A stretch of DNA of 63,540 nucleotides, filler included, from Bigelowiella natans CCMP2755 (lineage: Eukaryota; Protista; Cercozoa), in NCBI GenBank assembly GCA_000320545.1. It is 7 parts of 7 records of this genome, joined end to end, with 100 filler letters (N's around TTAATTAATTAA, not from the genome) between each part and the next. Parts side by side here need not be neighbours in the genome. Positions count along the whole stretch, not along the records: positions 24,121 to 38,057 come from ADNK01000933.1; 6 more parts are not named here. One strand, given 5' to 3'. Under the pieces are notes generated by a model, which was not told where the DNA came from, did not search any database, and worked only from the letters and a program-made list of their open reading frames with translations. Below, one piece after another: positions 1,429 through 36,986 of this stretch; positions within the stretch are counted from its first letter, which is position 1; every line of letters begins with the position of its first letter. The position numbers and the translations under genes are program-made.

Positions 1429-2091
1429 GAGAGAGAGAATGAGCACCCTTACTCTGCAATGTTTTTCATTTCTTCGCGCGCCTGAGCTTCATACGCACGA
1501 ACTCCTTTGCACGCATACTCACCCCTTCACTTGTCGCTTTCGCTATAATTGCCTCTCATCGAATCGCATCGCGTGTGAAGGTCCCTCACCGTATCGCTGG
1601 AATGTGGGGCGGAGACAGTCTTAGGCAGCGTGGTAATGCGAATAAAACGAGCACAGACAAAACAAGCACTGCGCAGCGATTTTTCACTCCAATCTAGCGT
1701 GGTGGTTTGCGGTGAATATTGATGCCTTACCTTCGTAATAATACTGAGAGGGAACACTGCTCGCCGCTTTGCTCTCAGGACGAGCCGTCTAAGTGCGTGT
1801 ACGCGACCACGCTCAAAACCCCCGTAGTTTGCGATCCCGACGAGGTACGTGCCAGCGACTGACCGCACCATGAAGAAGCAAACCATGCTGATTGAGCAGC
1901 CTGCATTCCTTTTTCGCTCGCTCCTTCTCGCCGCCCCCGCTCTTCGAGCATGGGAGAGACAATGATGCTCTGTCGTGGCCGGGCAAGTGCGCGTGCGCGT
2001 GTGCGGTGCTGTGATGCCTACCTTTTTGGAACATTGTTGCTTGTAGGCGAAGAAGCTTGAGGACATCGTGCAGGCAATACAGCGCGGTTAG
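262..2091 (+). CDS. PRKCSH: Glucosidase II beta subunit-like, C-terminal MRH domain (5' part upstream or unresolved). Exons about 262-316, 508-571, 979-1030, 1209-1247, 1581-1632, 1779-1844, 2047-2091
   Basis: GT-AG exons join in phase to ALYEKCFEKTVRQYTYEVCLFKDSYQKEGSSRTRLGNFDAYDEATKKMSFKNGQTCWNGPARSLTVSLECGAETVLGSVDEPSKCVYATTLKTPVVC, matching the PRKCSH MRH pattern (NGQTCWNGP, EPSxCxY). Confidence 0.9.
585..740. repeat. Intronic (GAT/GGT)n trinucleotide array
   Basis: Visible tandem GAT/GGT units between PRKCSH exons; source of spurious poly-D/M/I ORFs. Confidence 0.95.
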
Positions 2092-2215
2092 CATGCGGGC
2101 CGAGTTTCAGTCACACCGGGTGCTGGTGCTGCTGCTGCTGAGAGCGGAGGATTTGCCCAATAGCTTGTTTGTCTAGTTACACCAAGCGGAGAACAACAAA
2201 TGTATTTATGCATGC

Positions 2216-2257
<42 letters not shown>

Positions 2258-2262
2258 CATAT

Positions 2263-3050
2263 CTGTGCATGCACGCACGCTTTCGGAGGTTCCAATGCTT
2301 GTCATTGAGGCCATTGGGATGTGCCGTGTCTAGCGTATACGGCTATCTAGCTATTTGCACTGCTAGAGATCTAGAGATGTTAATGCCTGCCATGTCTTGC
2401 TAGCTTGCACTCCAGTCTAACTTGTAGCATCTAATTGCGACAACCAGATGCAACAGCGCATCGATCAACACTAGCTAGAGTATTCCAGCATCGCTGCTCA
2501 ATCCTTCCGCGCCAATGACAGACACACGCACATGCATGTTACAATGTCCAGAATGTGACACATGCACAAGTGCAAATGCTGTACGTGCAAGATGTACGTG
2601 TCGATGTGTCCACAGTGCCAATGACCATGCTAGCATGGTAGCTAGCTCTCATGCTAGCTTGTATACGCAACGGATGACTATAGCTGGCAGCTAGCTATGC
2701 GGCTGTTCGATCTCATCTAGTCATGAGAGAGCTGATCGATTAGGCTAGCTAGCTAGCAGCATCCATTGTGCGCACAGCGAGCTAGAACTACTAGAGCAAG
2801 CTAGCAAGGAGCTGCGTGCGGCTAACCAGTAACGAGGGATGCAGCCATTCGCAGCAGAAAGCTGCCGCCTGCTACGTACAACAACAAAGCTAAGACGGCA
2901 CAGGCTAGCAGGCTAGCAGGTCCCATGATTAGGTAAAGCATAAGCGAAGCCTTGACTTCTATGCAATGCGCGTCTTTTAGCTTTTACTCAAAAATTAAAA
3001 TACCATGCACGCGTGCATTAGCGGTAGGCATGCATCCATTCTAGCATTTA
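2263..3050. other. Intergenic CATG/TGCA/CTAG/AGCT-rich island between convergent PRKCSH and PLAC8
   Basis: Dense gctagc/gcatgc/atcgat words, no long SSRs, no credible ORF. Confidence 0.75.
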
Positions 3051-3473
3051 CGCACATATAGCATAGTTCTCCAAAATCAAACGACCTATAATAACAACAA
3101 GGTGATACAACACAATGACGGCATTTCGAAGCATATCTCCTTCTTCCAATAAACGAAAGCTCTTTATTTGCAACCCGCTCATTCTATTAACAGCTTTATG
3201 CCCGCCTTTGTGTCGGGTCTTCGCAATAGGCAAAGCAGCACTTTCCACACTGAAAAAAAAATATACTCAGCGCCAGAGAATCAGTCGCCAGGCAAAATCT
3301 CACCCAGTGAATATCTGGAGTATATATATATATATATATATATATAAACAATATACACAAACTAGAAAGCGTATGTTATCCATAAAAGCTAGGACGATGA
3401 GCTACGGTTTGTGTGTGCTTGCGGCAGAGGAAGGGCTCCTTACTCCGCCACGTAGTAACAACCCCACTAATCC

Positions 3474-25752: not shown

Positions 25753-26300
25753 CTCGCACACCGCTCTCGTACGCCGTGCGTTTTTGCTTCTATATCGTCT
25801 GCTACTTTCCCTATTCAGTAGCCCCCCCCCCACACCCCTTCCCCCCTCTTTCCCTACCTGAGATCAAGGAGCGTGATTGTGTTGATTGACGTGGGCACCC
25901 CGTAATCGATGATGATAGGTTTGGAAACTTGCTGAAACCGCGGCGAAAATCATGGGAATTGACCAGGTGTCGTGTCTTCTTGGAGCTTTGGGCATTGCCT
26001 GCGTATGCATGTGTGTGCGTGCGTGTGTGTGTGTGTTTGTGTGCACGCGTGCTTTGCCGCCACACGTTGGAAGAAGAAGAAGATACCTGACAGCATTGCT
26101 CTGCATGTAGGTTCGGATCGACATCTTCATCACCAAGGGCGACCCGGATGCCATTGCCATCAACGAGAACTCCATCTCCTCCGGGATGGGCTACCGCTCC
26201 CACTTCGAGTTCATGCCGAAGATATGGGCGCAGGTAAACGACGATGATAACAACGATAGAAGGATATAACAACGAGTAATGATGAGGAGAACAACAATAT

Positions 26301-30600: not shown

Positions 30601-31275
30601 AACCAGGTCGTTTCCCCCTGCTGGTCATCTACACGATCACAGCCAGAGTTTACAGCAGCGCCGCCCCCTTCCTAATTTGAGTGAATTTATGATGTGGGGA
30701 TTCATTCCTATCTGTCACGCCCTATCCCCAATGTCTTGCCACAGGCATTGATCGTGCCTTTCTTCTGGATGCCGACAATAAATAGCAACCACACGGCGGT
30801 AACTACCATTTCCCCCCCAAGGATTATGCAGAGTAACCAATGGCTATTGACAGCGGACATGCAAGCGTCGATAGTATACCCTCGCATTGGTGACTATCTT
30901 ATGCAGAAGATAACTCTCCACCAGGCGCCAATCCGGCCATCCATCGCATCAGAACACGCCCTCAAGATGACTGCTGCCCTCGTTTTGAGCACCCTTCGCC
31001 ATCGGCCCGAGAGCACGCAGAAGGGACACAGGCCCAAGCGTTCCCTGCGACAACGAATTCCAGGATATTTATAGGTGAAAACAAGGGGATTTTTTGTTTT
31101 CCCTCCCCAGATTTGTCGTTAAGGCCACTGGCCATCTATCTCCTCCCTCAGAAGGATCAACCAATTGGGGATCAACGCGGGCTTTTTCCTGGAAAACTTG
31201 CCGATTTTGAGGGAAAATCATGGCAAATAGAGGCCAACAATGCAGAGAAACCGTCGTCAGGTTTGGGCGTTTCAT
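27674..31275 (-). CDS. Hypothetical protein(s) with long exons; no recognisable domain
   Basis: Chain of minus-strand ORFs (27674-27910, 28241-28576, 28796-29062, 29094-29462, 29473-29973, 29970-30305) with protein-like composition and GT donors; 5' end uncertain. Confidence 0.5.
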
Positions 31276-31284
31276 GAAATATCT

Positions 31285-31780
31285 CCTTGAATGCAGGATG
31301 ACGGACTCACAACACTAGCCGCGCGCAGCGAAAGTTGACATGCATGTCGATCGAATGACGCTGTTTGTTGTCGTACTGCGATGACCTCTGCTGCACAGCG
31401 ACGAGTGAGAGGACATTGCTCAAACCGCTCATTTTGCATGACAGTTTGCTACGCAACATTGAACACATGATGTACGAATGAGATGCACGCACATCCCGTG
31501 CGCACGCGATGTCGCTACACATTCCGCCACCATGTTTATTCATGTATGACAGCGGACGCGCTTGTTCACGAGTAGTAGTTCATTCCCGCTTCACATGCTG
31601 TGTTGCATGTGCAAACGAGCTAGGCCATCATCATGCGTTGTGCATCATGTGCATGTGAAACCAGCTAGGCTGCTAGCTAGCTAGCAGTAGAAGCAGTGTA
31701 CAACTTGCCGCCAAATTGATCCCGCAAATTTTTGCATAATTGTGGTGTGATCGACTAGGCGTCGATGCTACTTCGTAATA
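31285..31780. other. Intergenic TpA-depleted island at the TrmN6 3' end
   Basis: 14 of 16 TA in 31310-31735 are (G/C)TA(G/C). Confidence 0.75.
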
Positions 31781-31798
31781 GTAACGTCTAACACAACA

Positions 31799-34071
31799 TC
31801 ACGTGTAAACAGAATGCAACATTTCATCGACGTAGAGGTGCGCAACAAGTTGTCTAAAAGCCTCACTATACCGCAGCTCTCCTTTATCTCCATTCGTAAG
31901 CACTGTAATCTCATTCTCAACACAGTTTGCAGTGGCATGATGACTGTGGGGAGGACTCTCTTCCTTCGACAGCTCATCAGCTTCGAGACTGTAGCCGCCC
32001 AACGCAGCCTCTGAGCCCGATTGCTTCTCGAATTTAAGAATTGTCCTTTTTGGAGCTGCGTTTGGGCTGCGAAAATAAGAAAAACACATCATATGAACTT
32101 GTTAATGTGCTATATAAAGATATCAGATATTCAATTCAACCGGAAGCGAATGCGCAATCTTTCCGCAAGGCTGAGAGATCTCATTGCGGCGGCCTCGATA
32201 CACTGTTGTATGGGCTCTGGTTAGATCAAAAGCATGTACGGTTGCACTAAATGAGATCTACCTCACGCTCATTTTGAAAAGATTGGAGAACCCATAATGT
32301 CCCCCCTGATTGAGGAGAAATTAGCTGCAAGCTTCTCGAATACTAAAGCCATCTTCCTGACCTGGTTTGAGCAAACCTGATGCTTTCTGCATGAGCGTAG
32401 GCGTGGGGAGGTTCTGCCGCATAGATGACACAACGGATAGGTATTCATAAGAACGGTTTCGGACGGAAGAACCAGCTCAAAGCATTGTAGCGAACCTCTG
32501 CAAAACGTGCTCTTTCCCGGGATATGGAAGAAAGACTTCCCCCTCGCTTCGTTTTGAGGGGGGGGCGTTTATGGAAGGGCGGATTGCATATTATCCAGTC
32601 GAAAGAGCATGGTTGCCAGATTTGGGCTTCTTCTACTGCGTGTTTCAATGCAAAACAATAGAAAATACCGCCGCACCCGCACCCTCAGCCAAAGCTTGCA
32701 CCATGACACAAGTTACTCGGAAAGAATCTTAAAACATGAAAAATTATTATCTTTTCCCTCTGTAGCGGCTACCTTGATTTGCACGCTTGAAATCGAGGAG
32801 ATGAAGTTTCAGGGAGTCCCTCCATCTTTCCAGTGCCATCTCATGCTCTGTTGATCTCTCACTGTTCCCGTCCTCATTGCTGCTACTACTGTGTCCGAAA
32901 TTTTCGGATGCCTTTATCGTTCGATTTGGTGTACATAAAAACACAATGGCAGTTTCAGTGGCGATGCGTTGAATGGAGTGCAAGAATCACCGGTCCTCTA
33001 ATCTACGTCTTCGTTCAATTCTACTAAAAAAAACACGTGTCGCAACGACTTGTTGATGAGCGCAAGCGTCAGAATCAAGAGCGTGAATCCGGGAGGCAGA
33101 TAACGGCGCGATTTCCCTGTTCAATCAAACGTTTCAGCTGAAACCCACACCTCTCTGTGTATTGTTGATATGTACCTGCCAAGAGTACTGAACTTGGAGT
33201 CAAGTTGTTGAGCCTATGCATTTCAAGTGGAATTGGATGAAGACGTAGATTAGAGGGCCGTCGATTCTCATACTCGATTGATCGCATCAGCACTGAAATT
33301 GCCATTGTATTCGTGTTACCAAAATTAATGACAGGATTCCGGTCCCCGTCCCTATGTCAAGGAAGTGCCCACCTCTGATGCGAACAGTGGATGAAAACTC
33401 AACTCGGTAAAACAACACTCTGCTTTTTTGCAAACCATCCATCGCTAGAATCAGACTTGCTAGAAATCGCGCGCCACTTTGCACTGTCTACGAGTTGGAG
33501 CAGAGCTTACCTTTGAGCGATCCGTCTGAATTCGACATCATCTGACCGGGTAGCGTATGCGCCAAACAAGATTGATTCGAGAGTGACCTAATCAGGATAT
33601 GGAAACTTGAGAAACAGCAGTAGGGCAGGGATTATGTATATACCACCTTCAATCCCATATCTTTATGCTGGTAGACTCTAAAGGATAAATGAGTAATCGA
33701 CGGGCAACACAGAGGCAGAATTCCATGATGGCAAGCTTTCCTTAATGTACCTGAAGTTCCGGCAATCGAATATATGAGGGTAAAGGCCAGTGAAACGCGA
33801 CCCATACCGAGAGACTTTTTCTGGGGAGCGTGTGCTGAAGAACGAATTGCCGCTATTTGAAACAAGGGGGTTGTGAGATGCAAATTAAAGTAGCTGTCCT
33901 GCTGCAACGAGATTTGGATAGCTCGAGGCTCTTCTCTTGGTGTGCATTGGTAGGGAAATACCTTATCATTCGCTTTCTCCCCATACTATGTCCAGAACTG
34001 CAGACAAGGCCCTGAAGCTTGGCTAAAGCTACTCTACACCTTGCATTCCCCACACTCATTAATTCTGGCAC
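31799..34071 (-). CDS. trmN6: tRNA1(Val) adenine-37 N6-methyltransferase-like (TrmN6/YfiC family), spliced; start uncertain
   Basis: Exons give YQHKDMGLKVTLESILFGAYA, FLDIGTGTGILSLIL|AQQ, IHALDSDACAHQQ|ASEN, FDWIICNPPF, RERARF, KASGLLKPG|GTLWV, PKRTILKF and RYSEAFRQLVAHLY, colinear with bacterial YfiC. Confidence 0.85.
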
Positions 34072-34389
34072 CGCTGGCTCTCCTCCTCGTGGAAATCGTA
34101 TTTTAGAAAATAATTTAATCCTAAAATAACTAAAATAATTTTAAGAACACAATATCTCACCATCCCCAGAAAGCGCATTCCGCAGAACATCCAACATTGA
34201 GAAACTGCATTGTCTCAGAATGTTCTCGCTTGAATTTCGGACCGGACTGAGCTGCTCGTGATGCTTCTGACAACTCGATCTCCGCCCTCCCTCATTTTCC
34301 TCGTTTTCCGGGTAAAATCCCCTACGATTCCACCTCGGAGACAAGGTCTCGCGGAGGGTATTTCTTAATTTCATCGGCAGTACCAATTT

Positions 34390-35205
34390 GTTCAGACCCA
34401 ACACCGCACAACGGCCAACGAAGTGGGGGAGGAAGGGCCTTCATTTGGGGAAACGTCAACATTGAAAGGATCATTTTCGGTCGGATGTCCCCTTGCTTTT
34501 GCGTTCAGGAGGCACGTGCAAGCAGACCTTTGGTCAGTGCTCCAAGTACCTCGATGAATGGAACGATGCCCGTGGTGTGTCCCTCAAATTCCAAGCTCGT
34601 TGTGGAGCCTTGTGGTGGCGTCACAACACTGCCAGATTCTTCGCACTGGAGCAGCATGAGGGCTGGTGCTCCTTGTGCGATTCTCACGAAGACACGTCCC
34701 TGATGCACCTTTTGTTCTCCTGCCAAGGAACGTGCGACATCAGAGACCGTTTTTGGACCAGGATTCGTCACCTGGTGTCTCGTCATCAACCTGATGCCAA
34801 TGATGACGTGGTCACGTTGCGTGCTTTCTCTGCCATGTCTTCCCATGACAAGTTTTGCCTCGCTTTGGGGGCCACATCTGGTGTCCCTTCGACTGACAAA
34901 GAAATCGACAGGGCTTTCCGTCGAACCATTGTCTTGCTTGACACTTTTGCTGCGGTTCGGCATCCAAGATGCCAGCTTCAGTTCCAATCAATTCACATCT
35001 CAACGGCACCATCAATCGGCATGCATGCCAATTTCAGGTAGAGGAGGACCGACCTACTGTCTCTTCACCAACAGGGTGCTGACAAGTCCTTGCAACGAGT
35101 GTTGTTGAGGCTCTGCTGCGTGCAAATGCCTGTCTCCCATGTGGTTCTGGCGCATGTAGTTTTGATCAACGCTTTCTTCATTGTTCATTGTTCATTGTTC
35201 ATCAT
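34390..35205 (+). mobile_element. 5'-truncated non-LTR retrotransposon (LINE) 3' end: ORF2 C-terminus with CCHC zinc finger, 3' UTR and (TTCATTG)n tail
   Basis: ORF 34493-35041 contains GVSLKFQARCGAL...WCSLCDSHEDTSLMHLLFSC...IRDRFW (zf-RVT-like C-x2-C...H-x4-C); in-frame TGA at 34463; short tandem tail at 35177-35203. Clade not determinable by eye. Confidence 0.75.
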
Positions 35206-35320
35206 GCAATCAATGGCTTCCAATGAACAATGAACAATGAAGAAAGCGTTGATCAAAACCACATGCACCAGAACCACATGGGAGACAGGCATTTGCACGC
35301 AGCAGAGCCTCAACAACACT
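35098..35320. repeat. Inverted repeat: 100-bp arms (35098-35197 and 35221-35320), 2 mismatches, 23-nt spacer
   Basis: Arm-to-arm comparison: identical except C35151 (vs T) and A35158 (vs G). Confidence 0.93.
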
Positions 35321-36269
35321 TCTACCAGCAACAGTGGGCCGACCGTGGAATCTTCAGGTGCTGCTGCATGCGAGGTCTCTGGGAACATCTGGAGGCAAAC
35401 AAGCCGCTTCGCCGGCTTTGAGCCCTCCGAGTGCGTGCCAACGGCAACTTTCTCGGATGCCCTGAACGCAATGCAAGGTGGAGAGGAAGAGTTTGGAAAC
35501 GACATCTTCAAGAGGCTCTCTAGTCGACCAATGACGTGTTGCAATGATTTCAAGAAAGCCTTTGCCTCCCGCCGCCAAATGCAAGGTGATGGCCGGAAGA
35601 ACTGCGGCAGTCTGACACGTGCAAATTGTATCGGAAGCAGTGTGGGCAAAAATGTGGGCTCTCAAATTTGCACACAGATGGAAGTGAAGAAAGAACAAAG
35701 TGTCTGTGGAAAACCAATTCAAACTGCTGCACAACAAGCTCTTGTGATGCTGAAGATTGTCGTTTCCTGTTTCCTGCGTTTTGGATGAATGAAGGAGTGC
35801 GGCTCAACAAACACAGGATTGTGTTGTTGATGTGGGATCATTGTGCAGTGCGTGCCAGTCATCTTGGAGCACCCATTGCAAATTGGTTGATTGCTGCCAC
35901 ATCGTTCCAGCGTTGTCGAAAAAGTTGCAACTGGGCACACCAGTGGCAAAAATGAATGAAGCCACATTTTGCTGGCGCATCCATGTTGCTCGTTCACATG
36001 CATGGTGATGCATGCAAAGTGCGTTTCTTGATGAGCGCGTTTCCATTGTGGTGTGTGCATTGCAAGCTGCTTTTGCAACAGATTCTACGAAACGCGGCCA
36101 ATGTGCGAAACACCGCCATTGTCAATTGCCACGTTTGCAAAACGAAGATGATGACACATTCCGAAAACCGCGCGTGCACATGGCAAAGAACGACGAATGG
36201 AAGCCTGCATCGCTGGTTTTTTTGGCAATGCGCCAGCTAGATGAAATGCAGGACATGTCACATCGATAA
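35237..36269 (+). pseudogene. TpA-depleted decayed coding sequence of unknown origin, adjoining the LINE
   Basis: 183-aa ORF with 0 Tyr and 11 Cys, followed by broken ORFs in the same composition. Confidence 0.4.
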
Positions 36270-36464
36270 AAAACACATAGCTAGATGGCTAGGGCGTACG
36301 CGTGTGCACATCATGTGTTTGCTATCTGATCGATCGAAGCACGCTTGCACGTGCTATGCGTTTGGGGTTCAAAGCAAAGTGTGTAAATGTTGCATAGCAC
36401 CTTGTCGTTTTCATAATGCCCCAAGATTCTATCTTGTATGTCTAAGGCCACATAGGACTTGCGG

Positions 36465-36986
36465 CTAGTTAGCTGTTCGACCACTTTCAAGATCTACCTT
36501 CGAGAATTCTTCCCGAAGCATGTCCTCTGCGTCACCCTTCTGCAAAGCTATCATTCTTGCCCTTGTAGCAGTGTCTTCGCCATCAATATTCTTTGGGTGC
36601 TTAGTCGGATCGAATCTCCTGTGGTACCTGCGAATGTGCTGATTGTTAGCTCTCCAACCATTATTCACCTATCTCCCTTTGAAAAACAACGACAACAACT
36701 CTGCAGGTGATACTACTCCTTAGAGGCCAGAAAGCGAAGAGGCAAAGAACGCAAGAATCATGTGGGTAAAGAATAGCAAGTAATTCGTTGGAAGGGATGA
36801 TAACACAGCCAAATCGAAACGAAGTTTTTTTTCGCACGCCATCTTCCGAAAGCATCAATGCTGCATTTCAATGGTGTTGTTGGGCATTGCATGGCAGGAT
36901 CATAGCTATTCTAGGCCGTACGGCTCTGACTGCCCCGCCAAATGGTAGATGCTGATATTATGAAGCTGCTCCCAATAATCCGCAAC

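What the first reader, a model, noticed from the sequence alone, without database searches (positions are those of the whole stretch)
34383..36240. Near-complete TpA erasure across a retroelement island: a candidate 'reverse RIP' mutator system
Seen: only 9 TA dinucleotides in ~1860 bp (roughly 100 expected at near-even base composition), and 8 of 9 are G/C-flanked on both sides (GTAC, GTAG, CTAC, CTAG). The LINE ORF has 1 Tyr against 9 Cys and 10 His; that Tyr codon lies in G-TA-C. The next ORF has 0 Tyr and 11 Cys. This is the drift expected from TAY->TGY/CAY. Known: fungal RIP converts CpA->TpA and 5mC decay converts CpG->TpG, so neither removes TpA; WA->WG is the polymerase eta signature; dinoflagellate 5-hydroxymethyluracil prefers hmU-pA. 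Inference: a repeat-targeted A:T->G:C process at W-flanked TpA, for example thymine oxidation by a TET/JBP enzyme or error-prone repair, acts as a genome defence.
Basis: partly seen in the sequence, partly recalled or inferred. Interest (0 to 1): 0.88.

Follow-up and report, generated by a model that had tools for sequence, protein, structure and literature searches.

The report
TpA-erased retroelement island, known hypermutation
A 1.9-kb stretch that has lost almost every TA dinucleotide is real. It is a retrotransposon fragment plus adjoining orphan DNA in what is almost certainly the alga Bigelowiella natans, and it looks like the end state of a TpA-specific hypermutation of selfish DNA that a 2026 preprint has already shown by experiment in this organism.

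Summary
Positions 34383-36240 hold 9 TA in 1858 bp (o/e 0.08) with a matching CpA/TpG excess, sharp edges, and 8 of 9 survivors flanked by G/C.

The island has four parts: a 5'-truncated non-LTR retrotransposon 3' end, its ~140-bp tail module (~1000 genomic copies), an inverted second tail, and about 1 kb of single-copy TA-free DNA with no homologues.

The nearest relatives are Bigelowiella natans gene models. Four of them are listed in the low-TpA gene tables of bioRxiv 10.64898/2026.01.13.699255. That mutation-accumulation study shows de novo hypermutation only at TpA (to TpG/CpA) in integrated viral DNA, and TpA-depleted genes enriched in reverse transcriptase domains.

- Dependence on repeats is not supported.
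- TET/JBP chemistry is not tested.
- Polymerase eta is disfavoured.

- The LINE family is TA-free as a family yet evolves under purifying selection (dN/dS 0.16).
- Copies show Tyr/His/Cys trimorphism and an excess of CA<->TG double differences, which indicates recurrent independent TpA loss.
- Conserved Tyr never becomes Phe.
- Survivors are rich in TAG half-sites, the class that is also rarest among the preprint's de novo mutations.

The parts
34382..36237 (.). TpA-depleted, CpA/TpG-enriched island
   Evidence: TA o/e 0.08, CA 1.58, TG 1.63. The edges come from the TA position list and sliding windows.
34382..34504 (.). Single-copy TA-free segment left of the detectable LINE homology; origin unknown, possibly a more diverged LINE part
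   Evidence: Depth equals the single-copy level (about 79 in X1) at 80% identity or more. No TA is present. Homology to P0001 starts at ORF residue 5.
34493..35041 (+). C-terminal fragment of a non-LTR retrotransposon ORF2 with a CxxC..H..C knuckle; 5'-truncated, no RT core in the window
   Evidence: phmmer hits: P0001 at 91% identity, and P0002 (1118 aa, RVT_1 at 480-708) matching at its residues 967-1109 with E = 1.1e-25. There are 25-120 genomic copies, rising towards the 3' end.
34547..34549 (+). The only Tyr codon (TAC within GTAC), at a Tyr conserved in outgroups; other copies carry His or Cys here
   Evidence: Alignments and sequences: window Y; P0001, P0028 and P0029 H; P0027, P0003 and P0031 C.
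35042..35202 (+). LINE 3' UTR. Positions 35061/35066-35202 form the high-copy tail module, ending in (TTCATTG)3.7 at 35177-35202
   Evidence: Summed depth is about 64,000-80,000 against 79 for single-copy DNA, so roughly 800-1000 copies. Loose ends lie at 35061/35066 and at 35198-35202.
35216..35357 (-). Second copy of the tail module in inverted orientation, tail to tail with the first
   Evidence: Arms 35098-35197 and 35221-35320 are 98% complementary. Depth is about 190x over 35260-35363 and falls to single copy at 35364.
35358..36237 (.). Single-copy TA-free segment of unknown origin (4 TA in about 880 bp), with no RNA coverage
   Evidence: Depth is 79.8 throughout and one contig of X1 and one of X6 match with 0 differences. 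No Pfam, PHROGs, protein-database, Atlas or local BLAST hits.

Best explanation
The island is the near-saturated footprint of the TpA-specific hypermutation (TpA->TpG on one strand, read as TpA->CpA on the other) that Bigelowiella natans directs at integrated foreign or selfish DNA.

Shown here:
- The island consists of a 5'-truncated LINE 3' end, its high-copy 3' tail module, an inverted second tail, and about 1 kb of orphan single-copy DNA.
- The missing TpA is balanced by extra CpA and TpG.
- The edge of the TA-free zone coincides with the edge of the inserted element in a second copy (L003).
- LINE copies differ by Tyr/His/Cys at ancestral Tyr codons and by CA<->TG double differences. Loss therefore happened repeatedly and independently.
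- The LINE lineages stayed under purifying selection while TA-free.

Shown by others: de novo mutations of exactly this type at about 6e-7 per site per generation in silent single-copy viral inserts.

Inferred:
- The same process made this island.
- The enzyme is a DNA-acting adenine deaminase (the preprint's ADAT2-like candidate). tRNA A34 always follows U33, which fits a UpA/TpA preference.
- The family has been driven to a TpA-free state that no longer offers targets.
For: - Signature: TA o/e 0.08, and the CpA plus TpG excess of about 140 is roughly the size of the TA deficit of about 105 plus the CpG deficit of about 30. TAA/TTA count 0, TAT/ATA 1, with CAA/TTG the most enriched trinucleotide.
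- Retroelement identity.
- Organism: the closest relatives P0006, P0016, P0030 and P0031 are JGI Bigna1 models, and all four are in the preprint's Tables S6 and S8 of low-TpA genes.
- Experiment: 230 of 231 mutations in the two viral regions are A->G or T->C. The preprint places them on TpA; 4 of the 211 NCLDV rows of Table S2 show ATG or ATT instead. Low-TpA CDS are enriched in RT, endonuclease-RT and DDE domains.
- Recurrent independent loss: Y/H/C and C/H/Q at conserved Tyr columns, never F. CA<->TG double differences number 4 against 0.8 expected, P = 0.009. Context-blind substitution at the observed 17% divergence would have made 9-13 TAs, and 0 and 1 are seen, P <= 0.001.
- Element-bounded: in L003, positions 1-1925 have normal TA density and the LINE part 1930-3300 has a single TA.
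- A distant relative in another sample (L001, 40% aa identity) has TA o/e 0.63 and 29 Tyr.
Against: - No de novo change was seen at this locus. X1 and X6 contigs match the unique parts with 0 differences, although only 9 targets remain.
- The family consensus is TA-free: only 1 of 40 common variants among copies creates a TA. dN/dS is 0.16. Selection for TpA-free masters could therefore contribute, or even suffice, for the LINE part.
- The origin of 35358-36237 is unknown, so 'foreign DNA' is assumed for half of the island.
- The organism's name is inferred, because the run labels are coded.
- The preprint reports that known viral genes as a set are not TpA-depleted, so how targets are chosen is not understood.
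Confidence: 0.8

Rival explanations
1. Selected avoidance without a mutator. LINE lineages lacking UpA/TpA are favoured, for example because UpA-poor RNA is more stable or because TA-targeting transposons cannot insert. The TA-free state would then be an adaptation of the element.
For: The consensus of 25-1000 copies is TA-free. The two lineages have diverged to dS 0.63 with dN/dS 0.16 while both stayed TA-free. Common variants among copies are 12 synonymous to 10 non-synonymous, against 22% synonymous expected.
Against: A TpA-specific mutational process is measured directly in this organism. Conserved Tyr is replaced by His, Cys or Gln, which are reachable by transitions from TAY, and never by the conservative Phe. 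The non-coding tail and about 1 kb of untranscribed single-copy DNA are equally TA-free. CA<->TG dimorphisms show a two-way mutational exit from TA. Selection for escape from the mutator is compatible with the best explanation and is not a true alternative to it.
Confidence: 0.1
2. RNA-level A-to-I editing (ADAR-like, with a preference for 5' U) of retroelement transcripts or of hairpin RNA from the inverted tails, fixed in DNA by reverse transcription.
For: ADAR-type enzymes favour U before the edited A (cited in the preprint). The locus holds a 100-nt inverted repeat that is 98% complementary. The tail is transcribed.
Against: CpA and TpG are equally raised on the LINE sense strand, whereas editing of one RNA strand would give only TpG. 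ApA is enriched (o/e 1.35). The single-copy parts have no RNA coverage. The preprint's main target is transcriptionally silent, single-copy DNA.
Confidence: 0.04
3. One reading: thymine oxidation by a TET/JBP enzyme (5hmU mispairing), or error-prone repair by polymerase eta, rather than adenine deamination.
For: T->C on one strand cannot be told from A->G on the other, so thymine-directed chemistry at TpA fits the sequence data as well as adenine deamination does.
Against: Polymerase eta's WA motif would deplete ApA too, and ApA is enriched. No TET/JBP evidence was sought or found here. The preprint identifies an ADAT2-like candidate carrying DNA-editing residues, but only by prediction.
Confidence: 0.05

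Closest known systems
TpA hypermutation of integrated viral DNA in Bigelowiella natans (Mettrop et al., bioRxiv 10.64898/2026.01.13.699255)
   Same: Same organism, by inference. Same dinucleotide signature: TpA lost, CpA and TpG gained. Their low-TpA gene sets are enriched in RT and endonuclease-RT domains and contain four paralogues of this LINE family.
   Different: This is a saturated end state in a retroelement, not an ongoing event in a virus insert. The island is only 1.9 kb, below their cluster rule of three consecutive 1-kb windows. The LINE lineages remain under purifying selection. No de novo mutation was observed at this locus.
Fungal repeat-induced point mutation (RIP)
   Same: A dinucleotide-specific transition hypermutation that marks selfish DNA and leaves sharply bounded islands of skewed dinucleotide content.
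   Different: The direction is opposite: RIP changes CpA to TpA and raises TpA, while here TpA changes to CpA/TpG and TpA vanishes. RIP needs duplicated sequence and a premeiotic stage, while here single-copy DNA is affected (preprint) and the mutations arose in mutation-accumulation cultures.
APOBEC3 and ADAR editing footprints in animal retroelements
   Same: Deaminase-type clustered transitions in retroelements, proposed as defence. ADAR shares the preference for 5' U.
   Different: Here the change is strand-symmetric, restricted to TpA with ApA spared, and acts on resident DNA, including silent single-copy DNA, rather than on RNA or nascent cDNA.
CpG decay by 5-methylcytosine deamination
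   Same: Loss of one self-complementary dinucleotide with a gain of TpG and CpA.
   Different: The source dinucleotide is TpA, not CpG. CpG is only mildly low here (o/e 0.74), and the mutations run from AT to GC.

Membership tests
B. natans TpA-hypermutation footprint (preprint criteria) | Rho TpA <= 0.43 | tested here: met
   0.08 over 1858 bp; the threshold is.
B. natans TpA-hypermutation footprint (preprint criteria) | Rho CpA+TpG >= 1.52 | tested here: met
   (178+195)/(112.4+119.9) = 1.61.
B. natans TpA-hypermutation footprint (preprint criteria) | Cluster of at least three consecutive 1-kb windows | tested here: not met
   The island is 1.86 kb, so at most one or two 1-kb windows would qualify. 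It may therefore be absent from the 124 listed clusters.
B. natans TpA-hypermutation footprint (preprint criteria) | Sequence lies in the B. natans nuclear genome | tested here: inconclusive
   Run labels are coded. LINE paralogues at 82-86% identity, and others more distant, are Bigna1 models. Contig sets are about 100 Mb, from many single-sample DNA studies. This is consistent but not a direct mapping.
B. natans TpA-hypermutation footprint (preprint criteria) | De novo TpA->TpG/CpA mutations at the locus | tested here: inconclusive
   Two DNA runs show 0 differences over the unique parts. Only 9 targets remain and only contigs were read.
Non-LTR retrotransposon (LINE) | Homology to an RT-bearing ORF2 | tested here: met
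   E = 1.1e-25 to the C-terminus of P0002, which carries RVT_1. The RT core itself is not in the window because the copy is 5'-truncated.
Non-LTR retrotransposon (LINE) | Copy number rises towards the 3' end, with a defined 3' terminus and a simple-repeat tail | tested here: met
   Copy number rises from about 25x to about 100x to about 1000x. Loose ends lie at 35198-35202. The tail repeat is (TTCATTG)n.
Fungal RIP | C->T at CpA, giving a TpA excess | tested here: not met
   TpA o/e is 0.08 and CpA o/e is 1.58, the opposite pattern.
Fungal RIP | Acts only on duplicated sequence | tested here: not met
   35364-36240 and 34382-34531 are single copy at 80% identity or more.
Polymerase eta WA->WG signature | ApA is depleted as well as TpA | tested here: not met
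   ApA o/e is 1.35.
ADAR-type RNA hyperediting fixed by retrotransposition | Strand-asymmetric TA->TG on the sense strand | tested here: not met
   CA and TG counts are about equal on the LINE sense strand.

The most novel reading that the evidence does not exclude
The TpA-free LINE and its roughly 1000-copy tail module are not corpses but escape variants. Chronic TpA hypermutation, filtered by purifying selection, has driven whole retroelement lineages to a TpA-free and almost Tyr-free coding state that still works and no longer offers targets. That would be an arms race visible in dinucleotide space. In addition, the mutator would have an extended motif in which a G 3' of the target A is disfavoured, and small islands like this one (under 3 kb, including orphan single-copy DNA) would be undercounted in the published survey.
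Probability: 0.45. Interest if true: 0.65.

Novelty: already known. Interest (0 to 1): 0.42.

Why it matters
A dinucleotide-specific AT-to-GC hypermutator aimed at invading DNA is a rare kind of eukaryotic genome defence, and a mirror image of fungal RIP. That shows the footprint can be recognised without experiments, so it could be searched for in other protists. The phenomenon is already in the literature for this organism, so this locus is an illustration rather than a discovery.

Tried and rejected
- Pfam on 7 island ORFs gave nothing above threshold, and PHROGs on 10 ORFs gave nothing meaningful.
- Rfam over the whole piece gave 0 hits.
- The unique right-hand part found no relatives by the search for homologous proteins, by the protein Atlas, or by local blastx, tblastx and blastn against all fetched proteins and loci. 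Its origin stays unknown.
- No other copy of the island exists inside the 14-kb piece.
- The look-up of encoding contigs had no record for P0001, P0003, P0006, P0008 or P0009 and no DNA for P0028. Only one related DNA copy (L003) and one distant relative (L001/L002) could be compared at the nucleotide level.
- An early idea that CA and TG excess flips at the palindrome centre, which would mean a one-strand process, was rejected after counting in 100-bp bins.
- Target-site duplications around the island or around the LINE fragment were looked for by eye and in the repeat output. None was convincing.
- The strand of the tail RNA could not be settled. First mates lie 60:1 on the + strand, but the library's orientation is supported by too few reads on the neighbouring gene.

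Full report
**Observation.** The stretch 34383-36240 holds 9 TA dinucleotides in 1858 bp, against 113.6 expected from its even base composition (o/e 0.08). CpA is at 1.58, TpG at 1.63 and CpG at 0.74. The 14-kb piece as a whole has TA o/e 0.67. At the background TA density 93 would be expected, giving Poisson P = 6.5e-29. Sliding windows and the list of TA positions show sharp edges: the TA at 34381 on the left, and 36238 on the right, after which TA is dense again. All 9 survivors have G/C on the 5' side and 8 of 9 on the 3' side, against 24% of background TAs flanked by G/C on both sides (P = 7e-5). The CpA plus TpG surplus of about 140 roughly matches the TpA deficit of about 105 plus the CpG deficit of about 30. 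TAA/TTA is absent, TAT/ATA occurs once, and CAA/TTG is the most enriched trinucleotide. The locus is present in at least 14 DNA runs.

**Anatomy.**
- The + strand ORF 34493-35041 is the C-terminal part of a non-LTR retrotransposon ORF2. It matches P0001 at 91% identity. It also matches the last 140 residues of P0002, a 1118-aa protein with an RVT_1 domain, at E = 1.1e-25. It carries the CxxC..H..C knuckle usual at that position.
- Laying contigs of two DNA runs at 80% identity or more gives a single-copy depth of about 79. Only 34532-35363 is repeated: about 25-30 copies at 34532-34843, 60-120 at 34844-35051, about 800-1000 at 35052-35259, and about 190 at 35260-35363.
- Loose ends at 35061/35066 and at 35198-35202 define a ~140-bp 3' tail module ending in (TTCATTG)n.
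- A second tail lies inverted, tail to tail with the first. Arms 35098-35197 and 35221-35320 are 98% complementary.
- The remaining parts, 34382-34504 and 35358-36237, are single copy, carry no RNA reads and are just as TA-free.
- The right-hand 880 bp has no relative in any search. ORFs occur there in all six frames.

**Organism and literature.** The run labels are coded. However, the LINE's close relatives P0006, P0008, P0030 and P0031, and the more distant Tyr-free P0016, are JGI Bigna1 models of Bigelowiella natans. Others are MMETSP transcripts. The DNA runs are about 100 Mb of contigs from many single-sample studies.

A literature search found bioRxiv 10.64898/2026.01.13.699255. In a mutation-accumulation experiment on B. 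natans, 231 of 302 nuclear point mutations fell in one integrated giant-virus region and one virophage region. Of these 231, 230 were A->G or T->C. The authors place them on TpA (TpA->TpG or CpA). The rate was about 6e-7 per site per generation, and the mutations occurred in only some lines.

The authors also report the following:
- 324 predicted genes with almost no TpA, enriched in reverse transcriptase, endonuclease-RT and DDE domains.
- 124 clusters of TpA-depleted, CpA+TpG-enriched 1-kb windows.
- An ADAT2-like candidate adenine deaminase.

Four Bigna1 relatives of this LINE (82088, 80443, 146792, 127844) are in their Tables S6 and S8.

**Mutation or selection?** Several new comparisons bear on this.
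1. A distant relative from another sample (L001, 40% aa identity) has TA o/e 0.63 and 29 Tyr. The Bigelowiella-type copies have 0 Tyr in 107-525 residues.
2. In a second DNA copy (L003), positions 1-1925 have normal TA density and the LINE part 1930-3300 has a single TA. The TA-free zone therefore starts at the element's truncation point.
3. At columns where outgroups conserve Tyr, the copies carry His, Cys or Gln, and the window alone keeps one Tyr. Phe, the conservative replacement, never occurs. Closely related copies differ by His versus Cys at the same codon. That is CA versus TG at an ancestral TA.
4. The window and L003 are 83% identical over 440 bp. CA<->TG double differences occur 4 times against 0.8 expected (P = 0.009). 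Context-blind substitution at that divergence would have created 9-13 TAs, whereas 0 and 1 are present (P <= 0.001).
5. The family consensus is itself TA-free: of 40 common variants among copies, only one creates a TA.
6. Those variants are 12 synonymous to 10 non-synonymous, against 22% synonymous expected (P = 0.001). Between the window and L003, dN/dS is 0.16 with dS 0.63.

Together these show a recurrent mutational loss of TpA operating on LINE lineages that stayed under purifying selection. It is not simple decay of dead copies.

**Flank context.** I tallied the preprint's Table S2 for the giant-virus (NCLDV) region. With both strands folded together, the base 3' of the mutated A is A in 67 cases, T in 67, C in 52 and G in 20, with 5 mutations off the motif. 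TAG/CTA half-sites are thus about 10% of events. They make up about 22% of TA half-sites in this window's background, although that background is a rough stand-in for the viral region. In the island, the surviving half-sites are TAA 0, TAT 1, TAC 8 and TAG 9, and 7 of the 9 survivors contain a TAG half-site. In L003, 3 of the 4 TAs in or beside the element are CTAC or CTAG. A slow TAG half-site therefore fits both data sets.

**Mechanism.** Shown: a strand-symmetric TpA->CpA/TpG process, bounded by the element, recurrent among copies, and acting on single-copy and untranscribed DNA as well. Inferred: the enzyme is a DNA-acting adenine deaminase, as the preprint proposes. From general knowledge, the natural ADAT substrate A34 always follows U33, which would explain a TpA preference. 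Sequence alone cannot exclude thymine-directed chemistry. Polymerase eta is disfavoured because ApA is enriched. RNA editing fixed by retrotransposition is disfavoured by the equal CpA and TpG gain on the sense strand and by the silent single-copy parts. How targets are chosen is unknown. The sharp right edge, 880 bp beyond the last repeat, suggests that the orphan segment is itself part of an inserted element rather than host DNA reached by spreading.

**Verdict.** What is added here:
- The locus anatomy.
- Evidence that TpA-free LINE lineages remain selected, which makes an escape-variant reading possible.
- The His/Cys and CA/TG dimorphisms as a hallmark of independent loss.
- The TAG half-site survival pattern.
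- The point that islands under 3 kb fall below the published cluster rule.

**Limits.**
- The organism is inferred rather than mapped.
- Only one related DNA copy could be aligned.
- Copy variants come from a truncated table of contig differences.
- No per-line reads were examined for new mutations at this locus.

Noticed in passing
window 33700-34115: RNA contigs show a spliced transcript just left of the island. Its introns at 33748-33804 and 33853-33961 have CT..AC ends on the + strand, so the gene is on the minus strand. Its exons have ordinary TA content.
   Followed up: partly
window 36300-36800: A transcribed region begins about 60 bp right of the island's edge (RNA contigs, and raw reads with the first mate on the minus strand). 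TA content is normal there.
   Followed up: no
window 35052-35155: Raw RNA reads on the high-copy tail module are strongly strand-biased (first mate on + 61.7 against 0.96 on -). This may mean mostly antisense, or mostly sense, tail transcripts. The library orientation could not be fixed.
   Followed up: partly
P0003 (protein, EukProt label Prorocentrum lima): A Tyr-free 107-aa fragment, 81% identical to this LINE, is filed under a dinoflagellate transcriptome. This is either contamination of that data set by a chlorarachniophyte or a shared element.
   Followed up: no
preprint Table S2: In the giant-virus region, TAG (A->G) occurs 3 times but its mirror CTA (T->C) occurs 17 times. Four T->C events are listed in ATG or ATT contexts, not TpA, although the preprint's text says that all of these A->G and T->C mutations fall on TpA.
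   Followed up: partly
window 31021-31470 and 25921-26220: Two shorter stretches have low TA (o/e 0.25-0.44) and raised CA/TG. They may be small or partial footprints of the same process, or chance.
   Followed up: no
window 34154-34312: A 160-bp TA-free gap lies just left of five ordinary W-flanked TAs (34313-34381) that separate it from the island. It is not significant on its own.
   Followed up: no
L003 1-1925: The related contig joins TA-normal sequence directly to the 5'-truncated LINE in one record from a JGI sample whose type I did not determine. If it is a transcript assembly, this would be read-through transcription of an inserted copy.
   Followed up: no
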